IMG/VR virus record: IMGVR_UViG_3300035698_029839
Location: 233,711 to 297,710 of that record
Length of the DNA: 64,000 bases
Reading direction: 5' to 3' (one strand)
The translations under genes and the position numbers were made by a program. Positions 12,469 through 57,226 of this stretch are shown in pieces. The notes under the pieces are model-generated. The model had not been told where the DNA came from, did not search any database, and was given only the letters and a program-made list of their open reading frames with translations. Within the stretch, counting starts at the first letter, position 1. The number at the start of each line of letters is the position of its first letter.

Positions 12469-13182
12469 ATGAAACAAAAAACAGGGCCTAAAAGGACTAG
12501 TATTATATGGCAGATGTCAAAAAAAGATTTTACAGAAAATGTGAAAAAAAGTTCTACTTTTAAAGAGATATTAAAATATTTTGGATTAGAAAATAAAGGT
12601 AGCAATTACAAAACATTAAAAAAAAGATTAGAGGAAGAAAATATAAATTATTCTCATATTCCTACAGGAGTAGGATGTAACAAAGGAATGAAAATAAATA
12701 GAAAAGCTATCTCATTAGAAAAAGTAATGATAGAAAATTCTACTTATTGCAGGGGGACTCTTAAAAAAAGATTATTAAAGAATGGTATGTTAGAAAATAA
12801 ATGTATGATCTGTGATCAACTACCTGAACATAATGGGATTAAATTAGTAATGGTTTTAGATCATATTAATGGAACTCCTAATGATCATAGATTAGAAAAT
12901 TTAAGATTACTTTGTCCTAATTGCAATAGCCAACAATCAACTTTTGCTGGAAAAAGGCATAAAAAACATTATTATTGTGAAAAATGTGGGAATAAAAGAA
13001 AAAATAAACAAAGTAAATATTGTTTTAGTTGTTCTGTTAAATTAAATGGGCAAAATAGAAGAAAAGTTAAAAATAGACCATCTAAAGAAAAATTATTAAA
13101 AGAAATAAAAGAAACTAATTATTGTGCTGTTGGTAGAAAATATGATGTAAGTGATAGTGCTATTAGAAAATGGTTGAAATGA
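12469..13182 (+). CDS. HNH homing endonuclease
   Basis: LDHING..DHRLENLRLLCPNCNS; paralog of 15078. Confidence 0.9.
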   Translation: MKQKTGPKRTSIIWQMSKKDFTENVKKSSTFKEILKYFGLENKGSNYKTLKKRLEEENINYSHIPTGVGCNKGMKINRKAISLEKVMIENSTYCRGTLKKRLLKNGMLENKCMICDQLPEHNGIKLVMVLDHINGTPNDHRLENLRLLCPNCNSQQSTFAGKRHKKHYYCEKCGNKRKNKQSKYCFSCSVKLNGQNRRKVKNRPSKEKLLKEIKETNYCAVGRKYDVSDSAIRKWLK

Positions 13183-13448: not shown

Positions 13449-13521
13449 AGGCATAAAGCTCAGCAGGCAGAGCATCGTGCTGATATCACGAAGGCCGTTG
13501 GTTCGAATCCAGCTATGCCTA
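13449..13521 (+). tRNA. tRNA-Ile(GAT)
   Basis: cloverleaf. Confidence 0.9.
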
Positions 13522-13589
13522 TTAGAAAGAGGAATTCTTCTTTTTTTCCCGAAATAATATAGAATAAAGGACAAAAGGGAGAATTCATC

Positions 13590-13808
13590 ATGAAAGAAGT
13601 CTTGATAGAATTAGTAAAAAGGGTAAGTAGGAAAGCAGTTATATTAGCAATAGCTATGGTGTTGGTATATATGGTTATTATAACACCGAATGCCGTAAAT
13701 GCAGTGATAGCTATAGGGGTGATTTCTGGTTTATCAATAGTAGGAGCAGGACTTCAATTTTATTTAGATCTTAAAAAGATCAAAGATGACGAAACAGATA
13801 AAATTTAA
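13590..13808 (+). CDS. small two-TM membrane protein (holin-like topology)
   Basis: two TM helices, charged tail, AGGA-N17-GAAA promoter. Confidence 0.6.
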   Translation: MKEVLIELVKRVSRKAVILAIAMVLVYMVIITPNAVNAVIAIGVISGLSIVGAGLQFYLDLKKIKDDETDKI

Positions 13809-13947
13809 GCAGGTTGAATGTGAGTAAGTTATCGCTTATGGAGCCTGATGTGGATGGTTCGATTCCTCCTCTCTCGATTACAAATTGTTCGAGAGATAGC
13901 TTAACGGTAGAGCGCAGTAAAAACACTTATTCCTCCCACATATCTGC
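13809..13947 (+). ncRNA. Y-RNA(YrlA)-like RNA 1 with permuted tRNA module
   Basis: GCAGGTTGA..GTTATCG / CATATCTGC terminal stem; T arm, loop-closed acceptor TCTCTCGA/TCGAGAGA, then D arm. Confidence 0.75.
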
Positions 13948-13960
13948 TTTTTTAAACTTA

Positions 13961-14052
13961 GAAATATGGTGATAGGGCCTACAAAGCTTGGGTCAGCCAA
14001 CTACCCTAGGGACGCAAGTCATTGGTCTGGGGTCGAGTCCCAGTCATATTTC
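13961..14052 (+). ncRNA. non-canonical tRNA-like RNA
   Basis: 9-bp acceptor GAAATATGG/TCATATTTC, T arm CTGGG-GTCGAGT-CCCAG, atypical D and anticodon arms. Confidence 0.5.
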
Positions 14053-14060
14053 TCTTTTTT

Positions 14061-14134
14061 ACCCGCTTCGCTTAGTTGGCTAAAGCATCTGTCCTACAAA
14101 CAGAAGATCGTAGGTTCGAGTCCTATCGCGGGTA
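14061..14134 (+). tRNA. tRNA-Val(TAC)
   Basis: cloverleaf, C33. Confidence 0.85.
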
Positions 14135-14136
14135 TT

Positions 14137-14260
14137 ACACAGGTTGATCGCATGAAGGTTATCGGATAAAACATTTTTTCTTCAAACAAAAAATGCAAGT
14201 AGGGTTCAAACCCTTACAACCCAGAAATGGGAAAATTCTTCTGCACTAACATATCTGTGT
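14137..14260 (+). ncRNA. Y-RNA-like RNA 2
   Basis: ACACAGGTTGA..GTTATCG / CATATCTGTGT; T-arm-like hairpin and short closed stem. Confidence 0.7.
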
Positions 14261-14263
14261 TTT

Positions 14264-14334
14264 CCCCTATTGGTGTAATGGGAGCACGTGGCACTGTCGA
14301 TGCCAGGGCAGCAGATCGAAACTGCTATGGGGGG
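14264..14334 (+). tRNA. tRNA-Asp(GTC)
   Basis: cloverleaf, T loop ATCGAAA. Confidence 0.8.
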
Positions 14335-14339
14335 TTTTT

Positions 14340-14421
14340 GAGAGTATTGAGCAATTGGTGGCTTATCTGGCTGTAACCCAGATTCTGAAAAGACTTGTAG
14401 GTTCGAATCCTTCTGCTCTCA
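14340..14421 (+). tRNA. tRNA-Tyr(GTA)
   Basis: cloverleaf with variable arm. Confidence 0.85.
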
Positions 14422-14546
14422 TTTGGAGTTACTATGAATAAGAATTCTAGAAACTTATTTTAGTACTTTAGTCGTCTAAGGGCAAGGATACCTGTGCAAG
14501 CAGGAGATATGGTGTTCGAGTCGTCATCTAAATATTACTCCTAAAT

Positions 14547-14637
14547 GGTAAGTTGGCAGAGTCTGGCTTATTGCACTTGGTTGCTAACCAAGAGGGCCTT
14601 GAATAAGGTCCCATAGGTTCAAATCCTATACTTACCG
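14547..14637 (+). tRNA. tRNA-Ser(GCT)
   Basis: long variable arm, G73. Confidence 0.9.
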
Positions 14638-14719
14638 TTAGTGTGGAAAGCCGCACACGTAGTTACTTCCTTTTCGAAGGAGCAGACTAGGCTTGACGAA
14701 GGGGAAGAGACTCCTAACT

Positions 14720-14806
14720 GGATGAGCAAGCAGATTGGTGACTGCACTGGTTTTGAAAACCAACGAGCCTTTAAAAGCCTTGAGAGTTCGATTCCCTCCT
14801 CATCCG
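14720..14806 (+). tRNA. tRNA-Ser(TGA)
   Basis: long variable arm, G73. Confidence 0.85.
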
Positions 14807-14812
14807 CTTATT

Positions 14813-14885
14813 AGCGATATGGTGAAAATGGTAATCATAGATCCTTCATAAGGATCAGTTCCTGGTTCGATTCCAGATATCGCTA
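14813..14885 (+). tRNA. tRNA with CAT anticodon (elongator Met likely)
   Basis: GATCC-TT CAT AA-GGATC. Confidence 0.8.
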
Positions 14886-14893
14886 TTTATCAA

Positions 14894-14969
14894 CTGAACG
14901 TGGGGAAGTTTGGCCTAACCCGCCTGGTCTGGAGCCAGGAGAACGCTGGTTCAAATCCAGCCGTTCAGA
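14894..14969 (+). tRNA. tRNA-Pro(TGG) variant 1
   Basis: loop TC TGG AG. Confidence 0.8.
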
Positions 14970-15077
14970 TTTTGTAACACCGAATAGAAAATAAGCAGTC
15001 AAGACATATGTTTTATTAAAGGAATCCTGTCTTTTATGTCGAATATATAGATATAAGTTATTTAGATAGGAGATAAA

Positions 15078-15767
15078 ATGAGAAAAAGAACAAGTGTTGT
15101 GTGGAAGATATCAATAGAAGAATTAAAAAAGATAGTAAAAAAGAATGATAGTTTTGCAAAAATTTTAAAACATTTTGGGATGGCAATAGCAAGTGGAAAC
15201 TATAAAACATTAAAAAAAAGATTAAATTATGAAAATATAAGTTATTCTCATATATCTCAAGGGCTTAATAATAATAAAGGAAGAAAATTTCCAGAAAGAG
15301 CTATTCCCTTAAAAGAAGTAATGGTAAAAAACTCTACCTATTGTAGGGGAACTCTTAAAAAAAGATTATTAAAAAAGGGTTTATTAGAAAATAAATGTAA
15401 TATTTGTGGACAAATTTCTGAACATAATAATATTAAGTTAATAATGGTTTTAGATCATATAAATGGAGTTTCTAATGATCATCGCGTAGAGAATTTAAGA
15501 TTGCTTTGTCCTAATTGTAATAGCCAACAAAAAACATTTGCGGGAAGAAATTCTGTAAGAAAAAAATATAACTGTATTACTTGTGGTAAAAAAATTACAA
15601 AACATTCAAAATTGTGTAAAAGTTGCAGTGCTAGATTGCAAAAAAGAAAAGTTAAAAATAGACCTTCAGTAGAACAATTATTAAAAGAAATAAAAGAAAC
15701 TAATTATTGTGTTGTTGGTAGGAAATATGAAGTAAGTGATAATGCAGTAAGAAAATGGTTAAAATAA
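15078..15767 (+). CDS. HNH homing endonuclease
   Basis: LDHING..DHRVENLRLLCPNCNS. Confidence 0.9.
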   Translation: MRKRTSVVWKISIEELKKIVKKNDSFAKILKHFGMAIASGNYKTLKKRLNYENISYSHISQGLNNNKGRKFPERAIPLKEVMVKNSTYCRGTLKKRLLKKGLLENKCNICGQISEHNNIKLIMVLDHINGVSNDHRVENLRLLCPNCNSQQKTFAGRNSVRKKYNCITCGKKITKHSKLCKSCSARLQKRKVKNRPSVEQLLKEIKETNYCVVGRKYEVSDNAVRKWLK

Positions 15768-15769
15768 AA

Positions 15770-15841
15770 GGCCCATTCTTCTAGTGGCTAGGATATCAGG
15801 GTTTCATCCTGAAAACAGCGGTCCGACTCCGCTATGGGCTA
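15770..15841 (+). tRNA. tRNA-Glu(TTC)
   Basis: cloverleaf. Confidence 0.85.
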
Positions 15842-15890
15842 TTTAATCAAGGCAGAAACTGAGGGTTCGAGTCCCTTCCAGAGTATTCCT

Positions 15891-15962
15891 GCTCTTCTGG
15901 TGTAACGGTTAGCATCCGTGATTCTCAGTCACGAGATAGGGGTCCGACTCCCCTGAAGAGTA
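15891..15962 (+). tRNA. tRNA-Glu(CTC)
   Basis: cloverleaf. Confidence 0.85.
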
Positions 15963-16030
15963 TTTTTCCTCTTATAAGTCCTTGTCTTTTATGGATTTAA
16001 AAAAATATTAAAAAAATTGGAAAAAAGTTA

Positions 16031-16096
16031 TTGAAAAGTGAAAGAAAATCCGATATAGTAATATCATCATAACGAAAGTTATGACTTCTTTTACAA
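16031..16096 (+). promoter_or_regulatory. promoter plus boxB/boxA-like leader for the ncRNA operon
   Basis: TTGAAA-N17-TATAGT; TCATAAC-GAAA-GTTATGA hairpin then ACTTCTTTTACAA. Confidence 0.6.
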
Positions 16097-16115
16097 GTTA
16101 ATAGAGAGAAAAAAG

Positions 16116-16186
16116 AAACGGGTTGAAGTCTAAAAGTTATCGATCCTTGAAAATCAAACACACTTTTTGACACACCATATCCGTTT
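16116..16186 (+). ncRNA. Y-RNA-like RNA 3 (minimal)
   Basis: ACGGGTTGA..GTTATCG / CATATCCGT. Confidence 0.65.
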
Positions 16187-16201
16187 TTTCTAAAATATGC
16201 A

Positions 16202-16456
16202 TGTGGGTTGATTGATATTGGTTATCGATAATTACTGTGAAAAAGTGCAAGTAAGGATCAAAAAAGAGATTTAGGTAAAGTTAGATTGAGATCACGCCAA
16301 TCAATAAATCTAATGGGAAGACTGAAGATCTTTAAGAGAACCTAGGTTGAAACATACTAAAGGCTTTGTACTGTAAATTTCCCAAAACTTTGTTTAGTCC
16401 TTAGATATCCATGAGATATAAAAAAGGACATCTCCAATTTCTCCAACATATCCACA
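16202..16456 (+). ncRNA. Y-RNA-like RNA 4 with about 200-nt insert
   Basis: TGTGGGTTGA..GTTATCG / CATATCCACA. Confidence 0.65.
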
Positions 16457-16465
16457 GGCGTTTAT

Positions 16466-16537
16466 CTGAGGGTCGTCTAATCAGGATACCTCCTGTTAGG
16501 GGAGGAGATGTAGGTGTGACTCCTACTCCTTAGACCA
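16466..16537 (+). ncRNA. non-canonical tRNA-like RNA A, CCA-encoded
   Basis: cloverleaf, D loop lacks GG, T loop TGTGACT, anticodon loop TGTTAGG. Confidence 0.7.
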
Positions 16538-16540
16538 TTT

Positions 16541-16632
16541 TGCTCGGTAGTTTAAATATAAAACAGTTGCTCTGTTAATCATTTATGATTGCTTGCAACA
16601 GATGGTAGGAGTGATGCCTACCCTGAACACCA
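16541..16632 (+). ncRNA. non-canonical tRNA-like RNA B, extended anticodon arm, CCA-encoded
   Basis: GTTGC/GCAAC stem with distal hairpin; GGTAGG/CCTACC T stem. Confidence 0.65.
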
Positions 16633-16639
16633 AAATTAT

Positions 16640-16709
16640 ATTAGAGTAGTCTAATCAAGATACCCCCGTTGAGGGGGAGATGTAGGTGTGACTCCTACCT
16701 CTAATGCCA
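16640..16709 (+). ncRNA. non-canonical tRNA-like RNA C, paralog of A
   Basis: ATTAGAG/CTCTAAT-G-CCA; T arm identical to A; 5-nt anticodon loop. Confidence 0.7.
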
Positions 16710-16715
16710 ATATAT

Positions 16716-16895
16716 GTTAGGGTCTGCTCGAAAGAATTTATTCAGAGATGGGCTGTGAGCTATAAGTTTTGTTAAATGAGTTGGATGACTTGTTTAACGA
16801 AATGGGTTCGCAAAGTCAAAGAGGAAGTGTCTTACACATCCAAAGGTGAGCATGGATCAGAGACTTCGGAGGTTTGAATCCTCCCCCCAACACCA
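16716..16895 (+). ncRNA. 180-nt RNA with tRNA-like acceptor, T arm and CCA
   Basis: GTTAGGG/CCCCAAC-A-CCA, GGAGG-TTTGAAT-CCTCC, internal long hairpin. Confidence 0.6.
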
Positions 16896-16911
16896 ATTTT
16901 CATTTTTTTAC

Positions 16912-16998
16912 TGTTAGGTAGTTTAAGTAAAAAACAGTTATTAAGGCACACCCCTGTTTTGATAGCAGATGATAGGTGAGATACCTATCCCTTACACA
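16912..16998 (+). ncRNA. non-canonical tRNA-like RNA E, paralog of B
   Basis: 10-bp anticodon arm, GATAGG/CCTATC T stem. Confidence 0.6.
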
Positions 16999-17104
16999 TT
17001 GGGTAGCTTATGGGTAAAGTTGGTTATTGAGTCGATTAAAGGTTTATAGTGCTTTTAGTCAATGCCTTAATAACAGAAGGATGGGTCCGATTCCCTCCCC
17101 CGAT
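16998..17104 (+). ncRNA. non-canonical tRNA-like RNA F, very long anticodon arm
   Basis: ATTGGG/CCCGAT, D arm, GTTATTGAG/CTTAATAAC, T loop TCCGATT. Confidence 0.55.
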
Positions 17105-17135
17105 ATTTTTCTCTCTATCAGTTTAAAAAAATAAT

Positions 17136-17209
17136 TGCGGAGTAGAGCAGTCTGGCAGCTTGTCAGCCTCATAAGCTGAAGGTCGGAGGTTCAAATCCTT
17201 CCTCCGCTA
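17136..17209 (+). tRNA. tRNA-Met(CAT), initiator-like
   Basis: 1:72 mismatch, fMet-like D arm; lacks the three G-C anticodon-stem pairs. Confidence 0.8.
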
Positions 17210-17211
17210 TT

Positions 17212-17349
17212 GAAGTAAGTGGTTGTTGATATTCGTCAGATAAGGCAAATTCTAATTTTTCTCATGTCAAAAATAAGAGGCCTTTGTTATAATTCAAACA
17301 TGATTGGATTATGATGATTCGGAATATTGACTGGCCAGCCACTTACTTC
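17212..17349 (+). ncRNA. unknown rod-shaped RNA
   Basis: 14-bp terminal stem GAAGTAAGTGGTTG/CAGCCACTTACTTC plus inner stems. Confidence 0.5.
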
Positions 17350-17379
17350 TTCATTTTTCTTACACCGAATCATTATTTC

Positions 17380-17454
17380 CTGAACGTGGGAAAGCTTGGC
17401 CTAATCCGCGAGCTTTGGAAGCTCGAGACGCCAGTTCAAATCTGGCCGTTCTGA
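17380..17454 (+). tRNA. tRNA-Pro(TGG) variant 2
   Basis: loop TT TGG AA. Confidence 0.85.
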
Positions 17455-17457
17455 TAA

Positions 17458-17531
17458 CTCTCAGTGGGAAAGCTTGGTATTCCGTCTGGTTTGGGACCAG
17501 AAGATCAGAGGTTCGAATCCTCTCTGAGAGA
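17458..17531 (+). tRNA. tRNA-Pro(TGG) variant 3
   Basis: loop TT TGG GA. Confidence 0.85.
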
Positions 17532-17540
17532 TTAACCAAA

Positions 17541-17667
17541 GTGGGTTGATAGATAGTAGGTTATCGCTTATAACGAAGTGGTTGTGAGTTCGAGTCTCAC
17601 CGCGGAGGCAACTCTGTGTAGCTCAATGGCAGAGCACTAAAAATTCTATTGTCGCTAACACATCCAC
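17541..17667 (+). ncRNA. Y-RNA(YrlA)-like RNA 5 with permuted tRNA module
   Basis: T arm GTGAG-TTCGAGT-CTCAC, acceptor CGCGGAG-GCAA-CTCTGTG, D arm GCTC-AATGGCA-GAGC. Confidence 0.8.
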
Positions 17668-17700
17668 GGTTTTTTTAATAGTATAGCACTGAATAGTGTT

Positions 17701-17771
17701 GGGGGTATCGTCCAACGGGAAGACATCTGGTTTGCAACCAGAAAATAAGAGTTCGATTCTCTTTACCTCCA
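17701..17771 (+). tRNA. tRNA-Ala(TGC)
   Basis: G3:U70. Confidence 0.9.
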
Positions 17772-17778
17772 TTCTCTT

Positions 17779-17852
17779 GGGGACGCATGTGCCAAGGGTG
17801 GCGAGAGACCTTTGCAAGGTATCTGTGGTCAGTTCGATTCTGATCGTCTCCA
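17779..17852 (+). tRNA. tRNA-Ala(TGC), second copy
   Basis: G3:U70. Confidence 0.8.
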
Positions 17853-17854
17853 TT

Positions 17855-17963
17855 AAACAGGTTGATTGGTTAAAAGTTATCGATAAGTTCGACTCTTATT
17901 CTCCCCTTCTTTCATGGGGAGAAATGGCCTGGGGCCACCTTTTCTCCTACCACACATCTGTTT
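17855..17963 (+). ncRNA. Y-RNA-like RNA 6
   Basis: AAACAGGTTGA..GTTATCG / CACATCTGTTT; T arm then closed acceptor TCTCCCC/GGGGAGA. Confidence 0.7.
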
Positions 17964-18041
17964 TTTATAAAAAAAGGAAATTCTAAGTATATGTCGAAAT
18001 AGTAAGTAGTAAGCTATTTAACAATTACTTAGGATTTCAAT

Positions 18042-18449
18042 ATGAACTATAAGACAGGAAAATATGCAAAGAAAAAATGTATTGGATGTGGATTAAAAAC
18101 ATTAAACATAAAATTTTGTAGTAATAAATGCCAGCAATTATATTTTTGGGAAAAAAGAAAAAAAGAGATAAAAAAAACAGGAGAGATCCCAGAAAGAAGA
18201 GTTGGTATACGATATCTTAAAGAGGTCAGGGGAGATAAATGTGAGATATGTGATCTTAAAGAATGGAATGGAAAAGATATTACTATGATCATGGATCATA
18301 TCGATGGAGACTCATTAAATAATAAAGATCTAAATCTTAGATTGATTTGTCCTAACTGTGACTCTCAGTTATCAACCTATAAAAATAGGAATAAAGGTAA
18401 TGGTAGACATTCAAGAAGAGTAAGATATGCAGAAGGTAAAAGTTATTAA
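18042..18449 (+). CDS. HNH endonuclease
   Basis: MDHIDG..NN...NLRLICPNCDS. Confidence 0.85.
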   Translation: MNYKTGKYAKKKCIGCGLKTLNIKFCSNKCQQLYFWEKRKKEIKKTGEIPERRVGIRYLKEVRGDKCEICDLKEWNGKDITMIMDHIDGDSLNNKDLNLRLICPNCDSQLSTYKNRNKGNGRHSRRVRYAEGKSY

Positions 18450-20556: not shown

Positions 20557-20588
20557 GCGGGTGTGGTATAATGGCAAAATGCAAGGTT
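20557..20588 (+). pseudogene. 5' half of a tRNA (Gly-like), truncated at the anticodon loop
   Basis: GCGGGTG-TG-GTAT-AATGGCA-AAAT-G-CAAGG-TT ends at the HNH stop codon. Confidence 0.65.
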
Positions 20589-21250
20589 TATATATTTAAA
20601 AATCCATGATCTAAATCCCAGTGATGATTGGGACAAAGAAACATTAAATTTTTAATATCATTAACAACTTTTAATTTTGTGTTTTTGTTAAATTGATTAA
20701 TAGCTTTAATATGACACAAATCTAATTTGTTATTATATGAACAAAGTGGACATTTATTTGGTTTAAGATTATAAAATTTTGCTATTTGATGAGCATGATT
20801 TCTGATGGATTGATATTTGTGTCTTGCATAGGTAGATGTAAAATCTTTAATATATTTCTCTCCATATTGTTCTATTCTGTTAAGAGTAAGACATTTTTGA
20901 CAATAATGGGTTTTTGATTGAGTTAGATTTTGACATCTTAAACATTTTCTTTTAGGGCGTTTTGGAAAAAGACTATTATTTGTTTTTGCAGCACAGGATC
21001 TAGAACAGTATTTAGGGTTTTTAGTTTTTGTTCCACAAGTAAAACAATTAATTATAGGTCTATTAGGAGCTTTTATTTTTATTATTTCTCCAAAACATTC
21101 TTTTAAAGCATTATTCCATGATCCGAATCTTTTGCTTACAGTCCATTTATCAAAAGATCCATATTTATTATAATCATTTAATGATGGAATTTTTTTTATT
21201 TTAATTTTAACTCTTTTAAGGTCTTCTATAAGTTTATTAGTTGTTATCAT
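20588..21250 (-). CDS. HNH homing endonuclease
   Basis: KRFGSWNNAL homing-endonuclease-associated repeat, LCHIK..NLMFLCPNHH. Confidence 0.85.
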   Translation of the reverse strand: MITTNKLIEDLKRVKIKIKKIPSLNDYNKYGSFDKWTVSKRFGSWNNALKECFGEIIKIKAPNRPIINCFTCGTKTKNPKYCSRSCAAKTNNSLFPKRPKRKCLRCQNLTQSKTHYCQKCLTLNRIEQYGEKYIKDFTSTYARHKYQSIRNHAHQIAKFYNLKPNKCPLCSYNNKLDLCHIKAINQFNKNTKLKVVNDIKNLMFLCPNHHWDLDHGFLNI

Positions 21251-23784: not shown

Positions 23785-23997
23785 ATGTTAGTATTGAGTA
23801 GACAAAAAAATGAATCGATTATGATTAATGATGGAGATAGACTTATAGAGATCTGTATCGTTGATGTGCGTGGTGATAAGGTTCGACTTGGAATAACGGC
23901 TCCAAAAGATATCCCTGTTCATAGAAAAGAAATTTATGAAGCGATTCAAAGAGAAAAAGAAGAAGAACAGAATAAGGATATTTCAGATCCTCTTTAA
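23785..23997 (+). CDS. csrA: carbon storage regulator CsrA
   Basis: [34 protein letters not shown]. Confidence 0.95.
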
Positions 23998-24003
23998 AGA
24001 TAA

Positions 24004-24076
24004 GCCCAGGTAGCCCAACGGCAGAGGCGGTAGACCCAAAATCTATTTAGTGAGAGTTCGAATCTCTCTCTGGGTA
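24004..24076 (+). tRNA. tRNA-Leu(CAA), short variable arm
   Basis: cloverleaf, C33. Confidence 0.8.
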
Positions 24077-24414: not shown

Positions 24415-26088
24415 ATGATTAAGACAGAGAAAAGAAATTTTGGTATGCATCCTAAGCTCTTGATGGATACCATTCAGAGACAAGCAGGAACACTCCAAAA
24501 AGCCAACCTTGAAGGTGTTATGAATGCTATTGAGGCAGGTAGTCCTGTAGTAAGAATCGAATTTGTAGTAAAGAATGGTATTGCAAGACTTTCCATCGGA
24601 GACGATGGGCGTGGTATTGAATCAAAAAAAGAGGTCGAAGATTTCTTCGAGACCTTTGGAACCCCTCACACTGAAAATGAAACGACTATATGGAAACAAT
24701 TCCGTATGGGTCGTGGCCAAATGTTTGCTTTTGGAAAAAATGTTTGGAGAACATCAACATTCAAAATGATTGTTGATATTAAAAAGCATGGTTTGGAATA
24801 TGAGTTACAAGAAAACCTGCCTTTTGTCAATGGTTGTCAAATCGACATTGAGCTTTATAAAAATCCTGTCGGTTATTCTCATAATAGTATTGAATCATAT
24901 AAAGAATGTATCATGGAACAGGTCAAATTCATGGAAGGTACAATTCTTTTTAATGGGGAGCAAATAAACACTCCTGCTTCTGAATGCTCCTGGGATTTTG
25001 AAGATAAGAATTCCTATTACCTGTTTAATATTGGTGCAGATTTCAAGATATATAATCTTGGAGCATTTGTTATGAAACCCTCTCCCACTGATATGGGAAT
25101 GATGGGCGTAGCTGTTTCCAAGAAACAGTTGAAAGTAAATTTTGCAAGAAATGATATTCAGCATGATTGTGTTACCTATAATGAAATGAAAGCTGTTATC
25201 AAAAAGAATCGTATCAAGAAAACACGGCAGAACAGAAGAAACCTTAATACTTGGGAAAGAATTGCTACCCTCAAAGATTTAAGGGATGGTGGGCAGGAAT
25301 TAAAAGACATACAAACCTTATCTCTTATTCCTACCGCACAAGGGAAATGTATTTCTCTCAATGCTATAAGAAAGTTAAAACAGCAATGGTGTTTTGCTCC
25401 GTTAGGAGACAGATATGCCGATAAGTTAATGGAGAGAGAACAGGCTGTTTGCCTTAACAAGGGAATACTTTCAGACCTTGGTTATACAGGAAAGAAATCT
25501 ATGTTCTTTGTTTGGCTCACAGGTAGTGAAAATGCGTATAGTTATGGTAACACCGAATGGGACGATATCGGAAAACTTTTTGTTGATTTCAAGAGATTGA
25601 GAGACGGAGTATCTGATTCTTATAATATTTTGCCGAATAAAAAATATACTCCCACTGAAAGAAGAATAATCAATGTTATACAAAAGATGAATTGTTGGAC
25701 AGGGAGACAGATATTACTTGGTTATTCTGATACTGCCTCTGCTTGGACAGATGGTTCTACATATATCTGTTTAGACCGTTCCTATCTCAAAGGTAAGAGT
25801 ATGAGTTGGGGTAGAGATATTGGTAGGGTATTATTAACTATGACTCACGAAATGGCTCATGATGAAGATTCAAGAAGAACCCATATTCATGGCCCTGAAT
25901 TTTATGAGAACATGGTGCAAATATTACAGTCTAACAATTCTCCTTTGGCTTATTGTGCTGATTTCAAATATGCTATGGAGAAAAGCAAAATAGAAGAGAA
26001 AAGAACTAAAGAATTAAATAAAATCAAAAAAGCAGAACAAAAAGTAGATGCTAAATTAGGTATTGCAGCAAAAGAAAAGAAAGCATAA
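24415..26088 (+). CDS. GHKL (HSP90/MORC-like) ATPase with C-terminal HExxH motif
   Basis: EGVMNAIEA, DDGRGI, FRMGRG; THEMAH near C-terminus. Confidence 0.8.
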   Translation: MIKTEKRNFGMHPKLLMDTIQRQAGTLQKANLEGVMNAIEAGSPVVRIEFVVKNGIARLSIGDDGRGIESKKEVEDFFETFGTPHTENETTIWKQFRMGRGQMFAFGKNVWRTSTFKMIVDIKKHGLEYELQENLPFVNGCQIDIELYKNPVGYSHNSIESYKECIMEQVKFMEGTILFNGEQINTPASECSWDFEDKNSYYLFNIGADFKIYNLGAFVMKPSPTDMGMMGVAVSKKQLKVNFARNDIQHDCVTYNEMKAVIKKNRIKKTRQNRRNLNTWERIATLKDLRDGGQELKDIQTLSLIPTAQGKCISLNAIRKLKQQWCFAPLGDRYADKLMEREQAVCLNKGILSDLGYTGKKSMFFVWLTGSENAYSYGNTEWDDIGKLFVDFKRLRDGVSDSYNILPNKKYTPTERRIINVIQKMNCWTGRQILLGYSDTASAWTDGSTYICLDRSYLKGKSMSWGRDIGRVLLTMTHEMAHDEDSRRTHIHGPEFYENMVQILQSNNSPLAYCADFKYAMEKSKIEEKRTKELNKIKKAEQKVDAKLGIAAKEKKA

Positions 26089-30872: not shown

Positions 30873-32207
30873 ATGCCAGTAGTAATAGAACATAAAAAAT
30901 TTAGTTGCACAAAGTTGGGTAGCAATAATAATAAGTTTTGGAACGTAACACTTTATGATAATGATGATGTTATGTCAGAATGGGGAAGACAGGGGAAAAC
31001 CTCACAATCTAAAACTTGGCCAGGTGTGGGTCGTTCTTTTATGGAAAAGAAGATAGAAGAAAAGAACAAAAAAGGGTATCATGAAAACCAAGTAGTCGAA
31101 GGGTCTGGGGAAGTTTCAATATCAGGACATAAAGTTGCTAACACTGAATTAAAAGATATAGCAGCTAAGCAAATAAAATCTAAAAATCCTATCGTAGCAA
31201 AATTAGTTAGTTTTTTAGTCGATGTAAACGCTCATGCTATACATAAAGCAACAGGCGGTAAAATTACATATGATACAAGCTCCGCTACGTTCAAAACTAC
31301 ACAAGGAGTAGTTATACCATCGCAAGTTACAAGGGCAAGAGATTTGTTATCTACTATGTACGATTATGTTAAAAATAACAAATTTGATATGATAGAGGAT
31401 AATTTGAACGAATACTTATCTTTGATTCCGAGAGATTTTGGTATGCACAAGATGAGTCCTTCTGATATTCTTCCAGATGTTGCAGCTGTTGGAGCAGAGA
31501 ATGATATTTTAGATGGTTTGGATTCTTCTTTTGCAGGATTACAAACGTCCACACCGAAAAAGAAAACGACGAAGAAAACAACAAAGAAAAAAGATACTCC
31601 ACAGATTTTTGATGTAGAAATGGGTATTGTTACAGATAAGAAAATCATATCTCATGTCAAACATCTTTATCAATCAACACGCAGAAGTATGCACCAGTCC
31701 AACAGTTTATCTGTACAAACAGTTTACTCTGTAACTATCAAGACAGTAAAAAATGCTTTTGATAGTCATGGAGCAAAGATGAAAAATATTTGGCAGTTGT
31801 GGCATGGTACAAAAGCAAGTAACCTTTTGTCTATTATGAGACAAGGTTTGATTATACCACCGTCAAGCTCTGGACATGTAACAGGTCGTATGTATTCAGA
31901 TGGTGTTTATTTTTCTGATATTAGTACTAAAGCATTAAATTATGCCACTAATTATTGGGGAGGTGGGGGTAGTACTGATAAAACATTTATGTTCTTAGCA
32001 GATGTTGCGATGGGAAAATATCATATAGCTAAAGATTCATGGACTAATTATCCTGTCTCTGGTTCAGATAGCACTTGGGCTAAAGGTAGAGACAAGGGAG
32101 GTGTTAATAGTGGCGTAATAAATGATGAAATGATAGTATATCGTACCGATCAGTGTAATTTGGTTTACCTTGTCGAATTTGTACCAAGGAATCAGCTTAG
32201 GAAATAA
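30873..32207 (+). CDS. WGR-domain PARP-like ADP-ribosyltransferase
   Basis: NNNKFW..EWGRQG (WGR), YLSLIP (regulatory domain), LWHGT / G.MY.DGVYFSD..K..NY / DEMIVY (H-Y-E triad). Confidence 0.9.
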   Translation: MPVVIEHKKFSCTKLGSNNNKFWNVTLYDNDDVMSEWGRQGKTSQSKTWPGVGRSFMEKKIEEKNKKGYHENQVVEGSGEVSISGHKVANTELKDIAAKQIKSKNPIVAKLVSFLVDVNAHAIHKATGGKITYDTSSATFKTTQGVVIPSQVTRARDLLSTMYDYVKNNKFDMIEDNLNEYLSLIPRDFGMHKMSPSDILPDVAAVGAENDILDGLDSSFAGLQTSTPKKKTTKKTTKKKDTPQIFDVEMGIVTDKKIISHVKHLYQSTRRSMHQSNSLSVQTVYSVTIKTVKNAFDSHGAKMKNIWQLWHGTKASNLLSIMRQGLIIPPSSSGHVTGRMYSDGVYFSDISTKALNYATNYWGGGGSTDKTFMFLADVAMGKYHIAKDSWTNYPVSGSDSTWAKGRDKGGVNSGVINDEMIVYRTDQCNLVYLVEFVPRNQLRK

Positions 32208-55691: not shown

Positions 55692-56093
55692 ATGAAAACT
55701 TGTCCTAATCCTAAATGTGGTAGTCATAAAATAATCATATTTGACTCTGATAATAATTATTGTCAAAAATGTAATGAATGGTTTCCAGCCGTAGCTGAAG
55801 AGGAATGTATAGCAGGATGTAGAGTATATGCAAATGAAGAAATAAAACATCATAAAGATTGTCTCTATTACCCAGAAAGCTTATCAAAAATGCATGATGA
55901 TTTCAAAACAAAACATATGGAACTTATTACTAAATTAGCAGATGATATATGGGCAGTAGGAAAGAAATTAGAGTCAAGAGAATTTGAAACAAGTAAAGAA
56001 TTAAAAGTTATTTCAGGTTGTCTTCATGATATTAGAGCAGAACGTGATACTGAATGGTACAAAAAATTCAAAATAGATGAGGAAAAATCATGA
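55692..56093 (+). CDS. Zn-ribbon protein
   Basis: CPNPKC, CQKC. Confidence 0.7.
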   Translation: MKTCPNPKCGSHKIIIFDSDNNYCQKCNEWFPAVAEEECIAGCRVYANEEIKHHKDCLYYPESLSKMHDDFKTKHMELITKLADDIWAVGKKLESREFETSKELKVISGCLHDIRAERDTEWYKKFKIDEEKS

Positions 56094-57226
56094 CAACAGC
56101 AATATATGCATTTAGTGGCGACCCTATAACATATGGTCATATTGACATAATCAACAGAGCTAGAGCAACATTCGACCAGGTTATAGTAGCCATCGGAGAG
56201 AACCCTGATAAAAATTATACTTTTTCTTTAGAGGAAAGAGAAAGTATGGCTAAGCAGTGCTTCAATGATTCATCAATCAGGGTTCTCTCATTTTCTAACT
56301 TACTAGTGGACTTTGCTTATGAACAAGGAGCAAGTGTAATAATCAAAGGAGTAAGAAACTCTGCTGATTTTGACTATGAAAGTATCTTACATTCTATTGG
56401 TCAAAGTCAAGAAGTTGGAATAGATACTCACATACTCTTCGCTGACCCCAGATTGGCACACATTAGCAGTAGTGTAGTTAAGGCAATAGCACAGCATAGT
56501 GGATCGATACACGAATACGTACCACTACACGTTAAACAAGCTATTGAAGAAAAGATATATGACCAAACTATCATAGGAGTAACAGGAGAGATTTGTGCTG
56601 GCAAATCTCATATATGTAAAATGTTAAGTAGATATCAACATTTTACAGGTGGTTATCAAAACATCCACAATATAGAATTGGATCAGATTGGTCATGATAT
56701 TCTTTCTAAACTCACAGATCCACCTTATGTACAAATAAGAAAAGAGATAGGCGAATTTGCACCTACATCTATTGAAGAGGATGGTTTTATCAACAGATCA
56801 GTATTAGGATCAATAGTATTTAATGATTCTAATAAACTACAAAAATTAAACGACATAATGACTAAACCTATAATGATTAGATTAAGAAAAGAAATTTCGG
56901 GAAAGAAAGGAATAATTTTAATCAATTGTGCCTTATTGGCAGAAGCTCATATACTCCACACATGCAACAACAACACCATTCTAATAAAGGTGGATAAAGA
57001 CACTCAAAGAAAAAGATTATTGGATCGTAGGCTAACTGAAGAGCAAATAGAGACACGTCTGAATAGTCAATACACTTATGATCGTAAGAAGTATCAAATA
57101 GAAGAAAATATCTATCATAATCGACATGGTAAGTTTTGGGAAATTGATAATACTAGTATGATAACTATGGAAGATTTACATAAGGAATTTGAAAAGATAC
57201 TAACAGATATAAGAAAGAAAAATTGA
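56090..57226 (+). CDS. coaD: phosphopantetheine adenylyltransferase fused to dephospho-CoA kinase (CoaD-CoaE)
   Basis: AIY.FS.DPITYGHIDII.RA, KGVRN..DFDYE, ISSSVVK; then IGVTG.I.AGKS, D.IGH, INRS.LG.IVF, RL.SQ. Confidence 0.9.
   Translation: MTTAIYAFSGDPITYGHIDIINRARATFDQVIVAIGENPDKNYTFSLEERESMAKQCFNDSSIRVLSFSNLLVDFAYEQGASVIIKGVRNSADFDYESILHSIGQSQEVGIDTHILFADPRLAHISSSVVKAIAQHSGSIHEYVPLHVKQAIEEKIYDQTIIGVTGEICAGKSHICKMLSRYQHFTGGYQNIHNIELDQIGHDILSKLTDPPYVQIRKEIGEFAPTSIEEDGFINRSVLGSIVFNDSNKLQKLNDIMTKPIMIRLRKEISGKKGIILINCALLAEAHILHTCNNNTILIKVDKDTQRKRLLDRRLTEEQIETRLNSQYTYDRKKYQIEENIYHNRHGKFWEIDNTSMITMEDLHKEFEKILTDIRKKN

What the first reader, a model, noticed from the sequence alone, without database searches (positions are those of the whole stretch)
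13809..17963. Six Y-RNA(YrlA)-like RNAs with a common scaffold and different tRNA-mimic payloads
Seen: six loci (13809, 14137, 16116, 16202, 17541, 17855) share 5' RGGTTGA..GTTATCG and 3' CAYATCY ends. These form a bulged terminal stem and a second stem that varies in sequence but keeps its pairing. Copies 1 and 5 enclose a circularly permuted tRNA (T arm, loop-closed acceptor stem, D arm); 2 and 6 carry partial versions; 3 is minimal; 4 holds about 200 nt. Several have anticodon-loop-like heptamers after TATCG (CT-TAT-AA, CT-TCA-AA, CT-TGA-AA, CT-GTG-AA). Known: bacterial YrlA Y RNAs have this permuted layout and bind Ro60/Rsr. No Ro60 gene is visible in this window. Inference: an expanded phage Y-RNA family that tethers host or phage Ro to different partners, or acts as nuclease decoys.
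Basis: partly seen in the sequence, partly recalled or inferred. Interest (0 to 1): 0.85.

Follow-up and report, generated by a model that had tools for sequence, protein, structure and literature searches.

The report
Six phage Y RNAs among tRNAs
A huge phage hides six Y RNAs (small RNAs that partner the Ro60 RNA-quality-control protein) inside its tRNA gene array. They share one Ro60-type docking stem but carry different, mostly tRNA-like, inserts, and the phage's own Ro60 gene lies 51 kb away.

Summary
GGTTGA-N7-12-GTTATCG occurs six times in the window against 0 expected, each time with a matching 3' CAYATC end. The ends form a bulged closing helix and a second stem, both with strong covariation.

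Copies 1 and 5 match Rfam YrlA below threshold and carry a covarying T arm, loop-closed acceptor stem and D arm. A covariance model built only from the minimal copy (copy 3) and its relatives in other contigs gives 29 hits in 156 unrelated phage Ro60 loci. All 29 lie on the Ro60 strand, nearly all beside the gene. Control loci give 0 hits.

The window is the last 64 kb of a 297.7-kb phage contig. That contig encodes a full Ro60 50.8 kb upstream on the same strand, in a conserved AAA+–Ro60–ankyrin–Rnl1 RNA ligase block. Two related huge phages (351 and 548 kb) keep both the Y RNA array and the Ro60 block.

These are Y RNAs of the YrlA/YrlB kind. Three things are new:
- their place inside a tRNA array, far from Ro60
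- six diversified paralogues
- a roughly 200-nt payload of unknown type in copy 4

Function is inferred, not shown. The anticodon-like loops are not conserved.

The parts
13809..13947 (+). Y RNA copy 1, YrlA type. It has the scaffold, a short hairpin, a T arm (13853-13869), a loop-closed acceptor-like stem (13870-13896) and a D arm (13899-13913). A U6 tail follows at 13948-13953. It starts 1 nt after the stop codon of ORF 13590-13808.
   Evidence: (YrlA 20.4 bits, partial)
14138..14259 (+). Y RNA copy 2. It has the scaffold, a long A/U hairpin, a T arm (GUAGGG-UUCAAAC-CCUUAC) and a 4-bp GNRA hairpin, but no D arm. It lies between tRNA-Val (ends 14135) and tRNA-Asp (starts 14263/4).
   Evidence: R1 28.8 bits, E 3e-4
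16031..16059 (+). Sigma-70-like promoter candidate (TTGAAA-17-TATAGT) upstream of copies 3 and 4. A similar TTGAAAGTGAAAG...TATAAT sequence lies upstream of the copy-3 orthologues in L019 and L240.
   Evidence: consensus match only, and the region as a whole is not enriched in such matches
16116..16186 (+). Y RNA copy 3, minimal (YrlB-like). It has the scaffold plus a small apical hairpin, with a U-rich tail.
   Evidence: (99% of cells paired, 6 compensatory pairs, 0 of 500 shuffles)
16202..16456 (+). Y RNA copy 4. The scaffold encloses a roughly 200-nt structured payload of unknown type. Its conserved elements are GGGAAGACU, ACGCCAAUC and an internal AGGUUGAAA, a covarying 7-bp hairpin and a GGGAAG/UUUCCC helix.
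   Evidence: (no Rfam family)
17541..17667 (+). Y RNA copy 5, YrlA type. It has the scaffold, a UCG-CUUAUAA-CGA mini hairpin, a T arm (17584-17600), an acceptor-like stem closed by GCAA (17601-17618) and a D arm (17621-17635). It starts 9 nt after tRNA-Pro, and a GG-U7 tail follows.
   Evidence: YrlA 37.2 bits, full length; z -2.3
17855..17963 (+). Y RNA copy 6. It has the scaffold, a T arm (AUAAG-UUCGACU-CUUAU), a 7-8-bp closed acceptor-like stem and a short GGCC hairpin in the D-arm position. It abuts the tRNA-like RNA at 17779-17855, and a U6 tail follows.
   Evidence: z -2.9; R1 37.7 bits, E 3e-6; the L019 orthologue scores YrlA 34 bits

Best explanation
The six elements are Y RNAs of the bacterial and phage YrlA/YrlB kind, encoded by a roughly 300-kb phage.

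Shown here:
- The 5' and 3' ends of each RNA pair into a bulged closing helix (variable pairs + GGU/AUC + one bulged pyrimidine + UG/CA).
- An asymmetric internal loop and a second, covarying stem follow.
- This module is the same one found on RNAs encoded beside Ro60 genes in many other phages.
- The phage encodes its own Ro60, 50.8 kb upstream on the same strand.

Inferred:
- The module is the Ro60 docking site.
- The RNAs are made as part of the tRNA precursor transcripts. Copies 3 and 4 may have their own promoter.
- Their ends are cut by the tRNA-processing enzymes that release the neighbouring tRNAs.
- Each RNA loads onto phage Ro60.
- The variable payloads act as adaptors or gates. They comprise tRNA-like elbows in copies 1, 5 and 6, a partial elbow in copy 2, none in copy 3, and an unknown 200-nt fold in copy 4.
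- The payloads would couple Ro60 to different partners: a host 3'-5' exonuclease such as PNPase, as shown for other Ro60-Y RNA particles, and tRNA-handling or repair enzymes such as the Rnl1-type ligase encoded 2.3 kb downstream of Ro60.
- The likely purpose is surveillance, repair or selective decay of tRNAs and other structured RNAs during infection.
For: - Motif count: six against 0 expected.
- Covariation of the closing helix and stem 2.
- tRNA-like domain: 20 of 33 pairs carry compensatory changes, 93.9% of cells are paired, and 0 of 500 shuffles did as well.
- Rfam YrlA: full-length sub-threshold hits on copy 5 and on orthologues or relatives.
- The same scaffold forms arrays of 4 (L243) and 5 (L079) RNAs directly upstream of Ro60 in GC-rich phage contigs. 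Those contigs were found through the RNA motif alone.
- Model R1 was built only from the minimal copy (copy 3) and its relatives in other contigs. It gives 29 hits at E<=0.1 in 1.67 Mb of Ro60 loci, all on the Ro60 strand and nearly all within 1.7 kb upstream or just downstream of the gene.
- R1 gives 0 hits in 0.93 Mb of control viral loci that all carry the 5' motif by chance.
- The same contig encodes Ro60: Pfam TROVE 1.8e-30 and vWA_Ro60 1.9e-61, and E 3.5e-114 to Xenopus Ro60 structure 1YVP.
- Window position 1 corresponds to contig position 233,711, and Ro60 lies at 195,013-196,737.
- Ro60 orthologues (84% and 73% identity) and the Y RNA array co-occur in the 351-kb and 548-kb relatives, about 44 and 47 kb apart on the same strand.
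- The AAA+–Ro60–Ank–Rnl1 block is conserved.
- Published precedent: YrlA RNAs mimic tRNA and lie next to Ro60 in bacteria and 22 phages (PMC4201824). A Thermus phage Ro60 binds two phage Y-like RNAs and host PNPase (PMC12135203).
Against: - No copy reaches the Rfam YrlA gathering score (best 37.2 against 69 bits).
- The 5' motif is GUUGA(A/U), not the published GNCGAA.
- The genes are 51 kb from Ro60, whereas published YrlA genes lie within about 4 kb.
- There are no expression, end-mapping or binding data.
- The host is unknown.
- The partner proteins and the purpose are inference only.
- Copy 4's payload has no known counterpart.
Confidence: 0.75

Rival explanations
1. The RNAs are Ro-independent tRNA-mimic decoys. 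They would soak up host tRNA-targeting defence nucleases or tRNA-modifying enzymes and so protect the phage's 33 or more tRNAs. On this view the shared scaffold is only a stabilising clamp.
For: The payloads keep tRNA elbow features: the T loop GGUUCGA, the D loop GG, and covarying arms. They also sit inside a tRNA array.
Against: - The scaffold is the part shared with RNAs encoded next to Ro60 in unrelated phages, and this phage clade keeps Ro60.
- The region that an anticodon nuclease would recognise is not conserved: only a 3-4-bp hairpin with a variable loop is.
- Copies 3 and 4 have no tRNA-like part.
Confidence: 0.08
2. The scaffold is operon punctuation: processing or termination signals of the tRNA transcripts. 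A long closing helix followed by a U run would work as an RNase III/E site or an intrinsic terminator, and the RNA product would have no function in trans.
For: Most copies are followed by a U run, and several abut tRNAs.
Against: - The payload hairpins covary and are conserved across divergent phages, which punctuation does not need.
- tRNA-Asp starts 3-4 nt after copy 2, so termination there would cut off the downstream tRNAs.
- The terminator scan does not call these sites.
- The association with Ro60 in other phages would be left unexplained.
Confidence: 0.07
3. Copies 1 and 5 are true circularly permuted tRNA genes. They would be processed and joined into functional, chargeable tRNAs.
For: The order T arm, acceptor 3' strand, loop, acceptor 5' strand, D arm is that of a permuted tRNA.
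Against: - There is no conserved anticodon arm, and the loops after GUUAUCG differ between orthologues.
- The acceptor closing loops carry no CCA (read directly).
- Rfam tRNA scores only 16.2 bits in a partial match, and ARAGORN calls nothing there.
- The same layout is the defining feature of YrlA (PMC4201824).
Confidence: 0.02

Closest known systems
YrlA (Rfam RF02553), the tRNA-like Y RNA of Salmonella, Mycobacterium and mycobacteriophages (Chen et al. 2014, PMC4201824)
   Same: - The 5' and 3' ends pair into a long stem with an internal loop.
- The interior carries a T arm, a loop-closed acceptor-like stem and a D arm.
- A short conserved purine-rich motif lies near the 5' end.
- The genome also encodes Ro60.
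- Copy 5 aligns to the model over its full length.
   Different: - All scores are below the gathering threshold.
- The 5' motif is GGUUGA(A/U) followed by (R)GUUAUCG, not GNCGAAN0-1G.
- There are six paralogues rather than one or two.
- The genes are interleaved with tRNA genes 51 kb from Ro60, not within about 4 kb of it.
YrlB and other minimal bacterial Y RNAs
   Same: Copy 3 has the scaffold with no tRNA-like domain, as do the 68-70-nt RNAs that head the Ro60-adjacent arrays in L243 and L079.
   Different: I made no sequence-level comparison with published YrlB. The assignment is by architecture only.
Yrl1 and Yrl2 of Thermus phage phiLo, with phage Ro60 and host PNPase (PMC12135203)
   Same: These are phage-encoded Y-like RNAs that partner a phage-encoded Ro60. 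This is the best experimental precedent for the proposed mechanism.
   Different: The phiLo RNAs lie directly upstream of Ro60, number two, and were identified by a CGAA motif. Here there are six, they lie far from Ro60, they sit in a tRNA array, and they carry tRNA-like and novel payloads.
Metazoan Y RNAs (Rfam RF00019)
   Same: - A closing helix with a bulge serves as the Ro60 site.
- The module is variable, and a U-rich 3' tail follows.
- From memory, GGUCCGA...GUUAUC in human Y1 and Y4 resembles GGUUGA...GUUAUC here.
- This phage's Ro60 is as close to vertebrate Ro60 as to Deinococcus Rsr.
   Different: Rfam Y_RNA gives no match at E<=10. The bulge is on the 3' strand here. The sequence resemblance was recalled, not tested.

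Membership tests
YrlA (Rfam RF02553) | Covariance-model score at or above the gathering score (69 bits) | tested here: not met
   Copy 5 scores 37.2 bits (E 1e-5, full length). Copy 1 scores 20.4 bits (partial). The others give no hit. Ro60-adjacent relatives also score below threshold, at 36-51 bits.
YrlA / bacterial Y RNA | tRNA-like domain: T arm, loop-closed acceptor-like stem and D arm | tested here: met
   Met for copies 1 and 5: 10 sequences, 20 of 33 pairs with compensatory changes, 0 of 500 shuffles as good. Copy 6 and its orthologues have it with a weaker D arm. Copy 2 lacks the D arm. Copies 3 and 4 lack the domain.
YrlA / bacterial Y RNA | The 5' and 3' ends pair into a long stem interrupted by a bulge or internal loop | tested here: met
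YrlA / bacterial Y RNA | GNCGAAN0-1G motif near the 5' end (PMC4201824) | tested here: not met
   The motif here is G-U-U-G-A-(A/U), with U where C is expected. The same U variant occurs on RNAs directly upstream of Ro60 in L243, L079, L285, L303, L311 and L325. It is therefore a variant of the Ro60-linked motif, not a different element.
YrlA / bacterial Y RNA | Encoded within about 4 kb of Ro60 on the same strand (PMC4201824) | tested here: not met
   Same strand and same genome, but 50.8 kb apart. The relatives show about 44 and 47 kb. No Y-like scaffold lies within 4 kb of this phage's Ro60.
YrlA / bacterial Y RNA | Statistical association of the RNA module with Ro60 genes | tested here: met
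   Scaffold model R1 gives 29 hits in 156 Ro60 loci, all on the Ro60 strand. It gives 0 hits in 100 control loci.
YrlA / bacterial Y RNA | Bound by Ro60/Rsr; carries tRNA-type modifications; substrate of RNase P | not testable with these tools
   Needs biochemistry.
Metazoan Y RNA (RF00019) | Match to the covariance model | tested here: not met
   No hit at E<=10 in 13500-18300.
Permuted tRNA gene | A complete tRNA, including a conserved anticodon arm, once the permutation is undone | tested here: not met
   No conserved anticodon arm. Rfam tRNA scores 16.2 bits in a partial match against a gathering score of 29. ARAGORN calls nothing.

The most novel reading that the evidence does not exclude
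The phage runs a modular RNA-adaptor system. One Ro60-docking scaffold is produced in six versions from the tRNA precursor itself, and each displays a different bait: full or partial tRNA elbows, none, or a new 200-nt fold. This would let a single phage Ro60 be pointed at different RNA classes or enzymes. Ro60 would work with its conserved AAA+ ATPase, ankyrin protein and Rnl1 ligase neighbours and with host exonucleases. The result would be a phage-encoded tRNA surveillance and repair particle that counters host tRNA-cleaving defences. Copy 4 would define a new Y RNA payload class.
Probability: 0.25. Interest if true: 0.8.

Novelty: new variant of a known kind. Interest (0 to 1): 0.6.

Why it matters
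Y RNAs are known to partner Ro60 in animals, bacteria and a few phages. What their variable modules do is still largely open.

This phage clade offers a natural series of six RNAs with the same docking stem and different modules. They are expressed together with tRNAs and paired with a phage Ro60 that sits next to an RNA ligase.

That makes the adaptor (tethering) hypothesis directly testable with one protein and six RNAs. It links Ro60 to tRNA repair or counter-defence in huge phages.

It also shows that searches restricted to the neighbourhood of Ro60 miss Y RNAs. They can hide in tRNA arrays tens of kilobases away.

Tried and rejected
- **Phage record search:** megablast of the region against GenBank phage records found no match.
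- **Genetic code:** I checked for stop-codon reassignment and found no clear gain, so I kept the standard code.
- **Ro60 inside the window:** Pfam on 30 of the 35 ORFs of at least 150 aa, and a TROVE HMM on all six-frame ORFs of the window, gave no hit. The 557-aa ORF just after the tRNA array was a candidate, but it has GHKL-like and HExxH motifs and is not Ro60.
- **Short motif scans:** Longer patterns were needed.
- **Profile searches for Ro60:** two profile-based Ro60 searches listed only the best 80 loci and did not show this contig. A codon-restricted TDNETWxG pattern did.
- **Exact-protein look-up of Ro60:** not on record.
- **Model R1 with filters off:** it found only copy 3 in the window. 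Default filters also found copies 2 and 6. Copies 1, 4 and 5 have inserts too long for this model.
- **Rfam on copy 4 and its orthologues:** nothing consistent.
- **Bacterial genome scan with the RNA motif:** The only structured hit was L589, a phage-like tRNA array binned into a Saccharibacteria MAG. This gave no host clue I would trust.
- **GGTTGA next to the Ro60 ribosome-binding site:** at chance level for a hexamer, so I dropped it.

Full report
**Setting.** The window has 32% G+C and carries 33 tRNA genes on the + strand between 12.3 and 24.1 kb, interspersed with HNH endonuclease ORFs. It is the last 64 kb of the viral contig IMGVR_UViG_3300035698_029839, which is 297,710 bp long. Window position 1 corresponds to contig position 233,711. 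No GenBank phage record is similar at the DNA level.

**Observation.** GGTTGA-N7-12-GTTATCG occurs six times, all on the + strand, with none expected in shuffles. Each copy ends in CA(C/T)ATC(C/T), read directly. From closing stem to closing stem the elements are:
- copy 1: 13809-13947
- copy 2: 14138-14259
- copy 3: 16116-16186
- copy 4: 16202-16456
- copy 5: 17541-17667
- copy 6: 17855-17963

All six fold so that the ends pair and a second stem follows.

**Relatives.** Motif scans found further arrays.
- The same six-member array occurs in a 350,866-bp viral contig (L019).
- At least two members occur in a 547,943-bp contig (L240).
- Seven further metagenome fragments carry members (L481, L482, L484, L486-L489). 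Three further loci only duplicate contigs already in hand: L480 and L485 match L019, and L483 matches the window.
- One contig binned into a Saccharibacteria MAG carries 20 tRNAs and five such RNAs in the same order. It is probably a mis-binned phage fragment.

In all, 39 distinct sequences were collected.

**Scaffold structure.** In twelve minimal members, RNAalifold and pair counting give a closing helix of variable pairs + GGU/AUC, one bulged pyrimidine and UG/CA. An internal loop and a second stem follow. 99% of cells are paired, six pairs carry compensatory changes, and 0 of 500 shuffles did as well. Slid controls reach only 29-62% paired. Across all 39 sequences the three variable pairs outside GGU/AUC are always paired, with two to four pair types each. 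In stem 2, each 5' strand pairs much better with its own 3' strand than with other copies' strands. None of 10,000 permutations did as well, and only 1 of 720 (the identity) for the window's six.

**Payloads.**
- Copies 1 and 5, with eight orthologues, share a T arm (loop GGUUCGA), a 7-8-bp stem closed by a loop where a tRNA has its acceptor stem, and a D arm with the GG dinucleotide. Twenty of 33 pairs have compensatory changes and 93.9% of cells are paired, with 0 of 500 shuffles as good.
- A 3-4-bp hairpin formed by the UCG of GUUAUCG and a downstream CGA recurs. Its loop varies, so the 'anticodon-like heptamers' are not conserved features (alignment).
- Copy 2 keeps an A/U hairpin (with strand-swapped orthologues), a T arm and a GNRA hairpin.
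- Copy 6 keeps a T arm, a strongly covarying acceptor-like stem and a weak D-position hairpin. Its L019 orthologue scores 34 bits on YrlA.
- Copy 3 has only a small apical hairpin.
- Copy 4 encloses about 200 nt that are conserved in seven phages. It has a covarying 7-bp hairpin and a GGGAAG/UUUCCC helix, and no Rfam family matches it.

**Identity.** Rfam YrlA aligns to copy 5 over its full length (37.2 bits, E 1e-5) and to the tRNA-like core of copy 1 (20.4 bits). Both are below the 69-bit gathering score.

The decisive evidence came from outside the window. Two GC-rich phage contigs were fetched purely because they matched the RNA motif (L243 and L079). Both turned out to encode Ro60 right next to the match. 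They carry four and five tandem RNAs with the same scaffold (GGGUUGAA...GGUUAUC...CGCAUCC) directly upstream of the gene.

I then built a covariance model (R1) from the minimal copy 3 and eleven relatives from other contigs only. It gave 29 hits at E<=0.1 in 156 phage Ro60 loci (1.67 Mb). All 29 are on the Ro60 strand, and nearly all lie within 1.7 kb upstream or just downstream of the gene. It gave no hit in 100 control viral loci (0.93 Mb), each of which contains the 5' motif by chance.

The scaffold is therefore the Ro60-linked Y RNA module. It is a U variant of the published GNCGAAN0-1G motif (PMC4201824).

**Ro60.** The window has no TROVE protein. A codon-restricted search for the TDNETWxG motif hit the window's own contig. 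The ORF is 575 aa and matches:
- Pfam TROVE at 1.8e-30 and vWA_Ro60 at 1.9e-61
- Xenopus Ro60 (1YVP) at E 3.5e-114
- human RO60 at E 4e-111
- Deinococcus Rsr at E 1e-92

It lies at contig 195,013-196,737 on the + strand, 50.8 kb upstream of the first Y RNA (contig 247,519). No Y-like scaffold lies beside it.

Orthologues (84%, 73% and 62% identity) occur in the L019 and L240 contigs and in a fourth contig. In the first two, Ro60 is again about 44 and 47 kb upstream of the array on the same strand.

The block AAA+ ATPase – Ro60 – ankyrin protein – Rnl1-type RNA ligase is conserved in the L019 and L240 contigs (L491, L493). The fourth contig (L492) keeps AAA+, Ro60 and the ankyrin protein, but no ligase match was found there. 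In this phage a queuosine-salvage gene and a LAGLIDADG endonuclease also lie nearby.

**Mechanism.** The shown facts are the structure, its conservation, its link to Ro60 genes in general, and the presence of Ro60 in this genome.

The rest is inferred:
- The RNAs are excised from tRNA precursors. Copy 2 lies 2-3 nt after tRNA-Val and 3-4 nt before tRNA-Asp. Copy 5 lies 9 nt after tRNA-Pro. Copy 6 abuts a tRNA-like RNA.
- They bind the phage Ro60 through the scaffold.
- They use their payloads to gate Ro60 or to tether it to partners.

Experimental precedents exist: Ro60–Y RNA–PNPase particles in bacteria, and a Thermus phage Ro60 that binds two phage Y-like RNAs and host PNPase (PMC4201824, PMC12135203). 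The neighbouring Rnl1-type ligase and the tRNA-like payloads point to tRNA surveillance or repair, but nothing here tests that.

**Rivals.** Ro-independent decoys, operon punctuation and true permuted tRNAs are each disfavoured by the Ro60 association, by conservation of the payloads, or by the lack of a conserved anticodon arm. Details are given under rival explanations.

**Novelty.** Phage Y RNAs next to Ro60 are known: in 22 phages in PMC4201824, with Bacillus phage G and CcrColossus cited in PMC12135203, and jumbo-phage TROVE proteins noted in PMC7824862. In the papers I searched I found no description of any of the following:
- Y RNA genes interleaved with tRNA genes tens of kilobases from Ro60
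- six diversified paralogues in one phage
- the copy 4 payload

I rate this a new variant of a known kind.

Noticed in passing
window 13966-14058: An unannotated tRNA-like RNA between copy 1 and tRNA-Val. It has a 9-bp closing stem (AGAAATATG/CATATTTCT) and a T arm (CTGGG-GTCGAGT-CCCAG). Neither ARAGORN nor Rfam calls it.
   Followed up: no
window 16457-17130 (and L019 10820-11110): A cluster of unannotated tRNA-like sequences between copies 4 and 5. T-arm-like hairpins (GTAGG-TGTGACT-CCTAC) occur twice, and some sequences end in ACCA. The stretch 16990-17105 looks like a tRNA with an insert of about 45 nt in the anticodon arm. The cluster is conserved in the related phage.
   Followed up: no
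window 17779-17855: A tRNA-like RNA with an acceptor stem and a T arm that ARAGORN does not call. Rfam gives a partial tmRNA match (21.8 bits, E 6e-6). It directly abuts Y RNA copy 6 and is conserved in relatives.
   Followed up: partly
L490 (contig 191,013-200,737); also L491 and L493: Ro60 sits in a conserved block: AAA+ ATPase (535 aa), Ro60, ankyrin-repeat protein and an Rnl1-type RNA ligase (402 aa). In this phage a queuosine-salvage gene fragment and a LAGLIDADG endonuclease lie nearby.
   Followed up: yes
window 30873-32207: A eukaryote-style poly(ADP-ribose) polymerase with WGR, PARP regulatory and PARP catalytic domains (catalytic domain E 1.9e-25).
   Followed up: no
window 24415-26088: A 557-aa protein just after the tRNA array. 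It has an N-terminal DDGRGI (GHKL ATPase-like) motif and a C-terminal HEMAHD motif, and no Pfam match. Identical copies occur in several metagenomes.
   Followed up: partly
window 23785-23997: A 70-aa CsrA homologue (precomputed Pfam PF02599), encoded just upstream of the last tRNA gene of the array (tRNA-Leu, 24004-24076).
   Followed up: no
window 12469-13182, 15078-15767, 20588-21250 (-): HNH-type homing endonuclease ORFs are interspersed among the tRNA and Y RNA genes.
   Followed up: no
L589 (CAZAFQ010000014.1, binned as Candidatus Saccharibacteria): An 11-kb contig with 20 tRNAs and five Y-like RNAs in the same order as in this phage. It is most likely a phage fragment binned into a bacterial MAG, so it gives no reliable host clue.
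   Followed up: partly
L243 (626-1162 on the - strand view) and L079 (1992-2725 on the - strand view): GC-rich phage contigs with four and five tandem Y RNAs directly upstream of Ro60. Multi-copy Y RNA arrays are therefore not unique to the huge phages.
   Followed up: partly
window 56090-57226: A fused cytidylyltransferase-like and dephospho-CoA kinase protein, suggesting the last steps of CoA synthesis.
   Followed up: no
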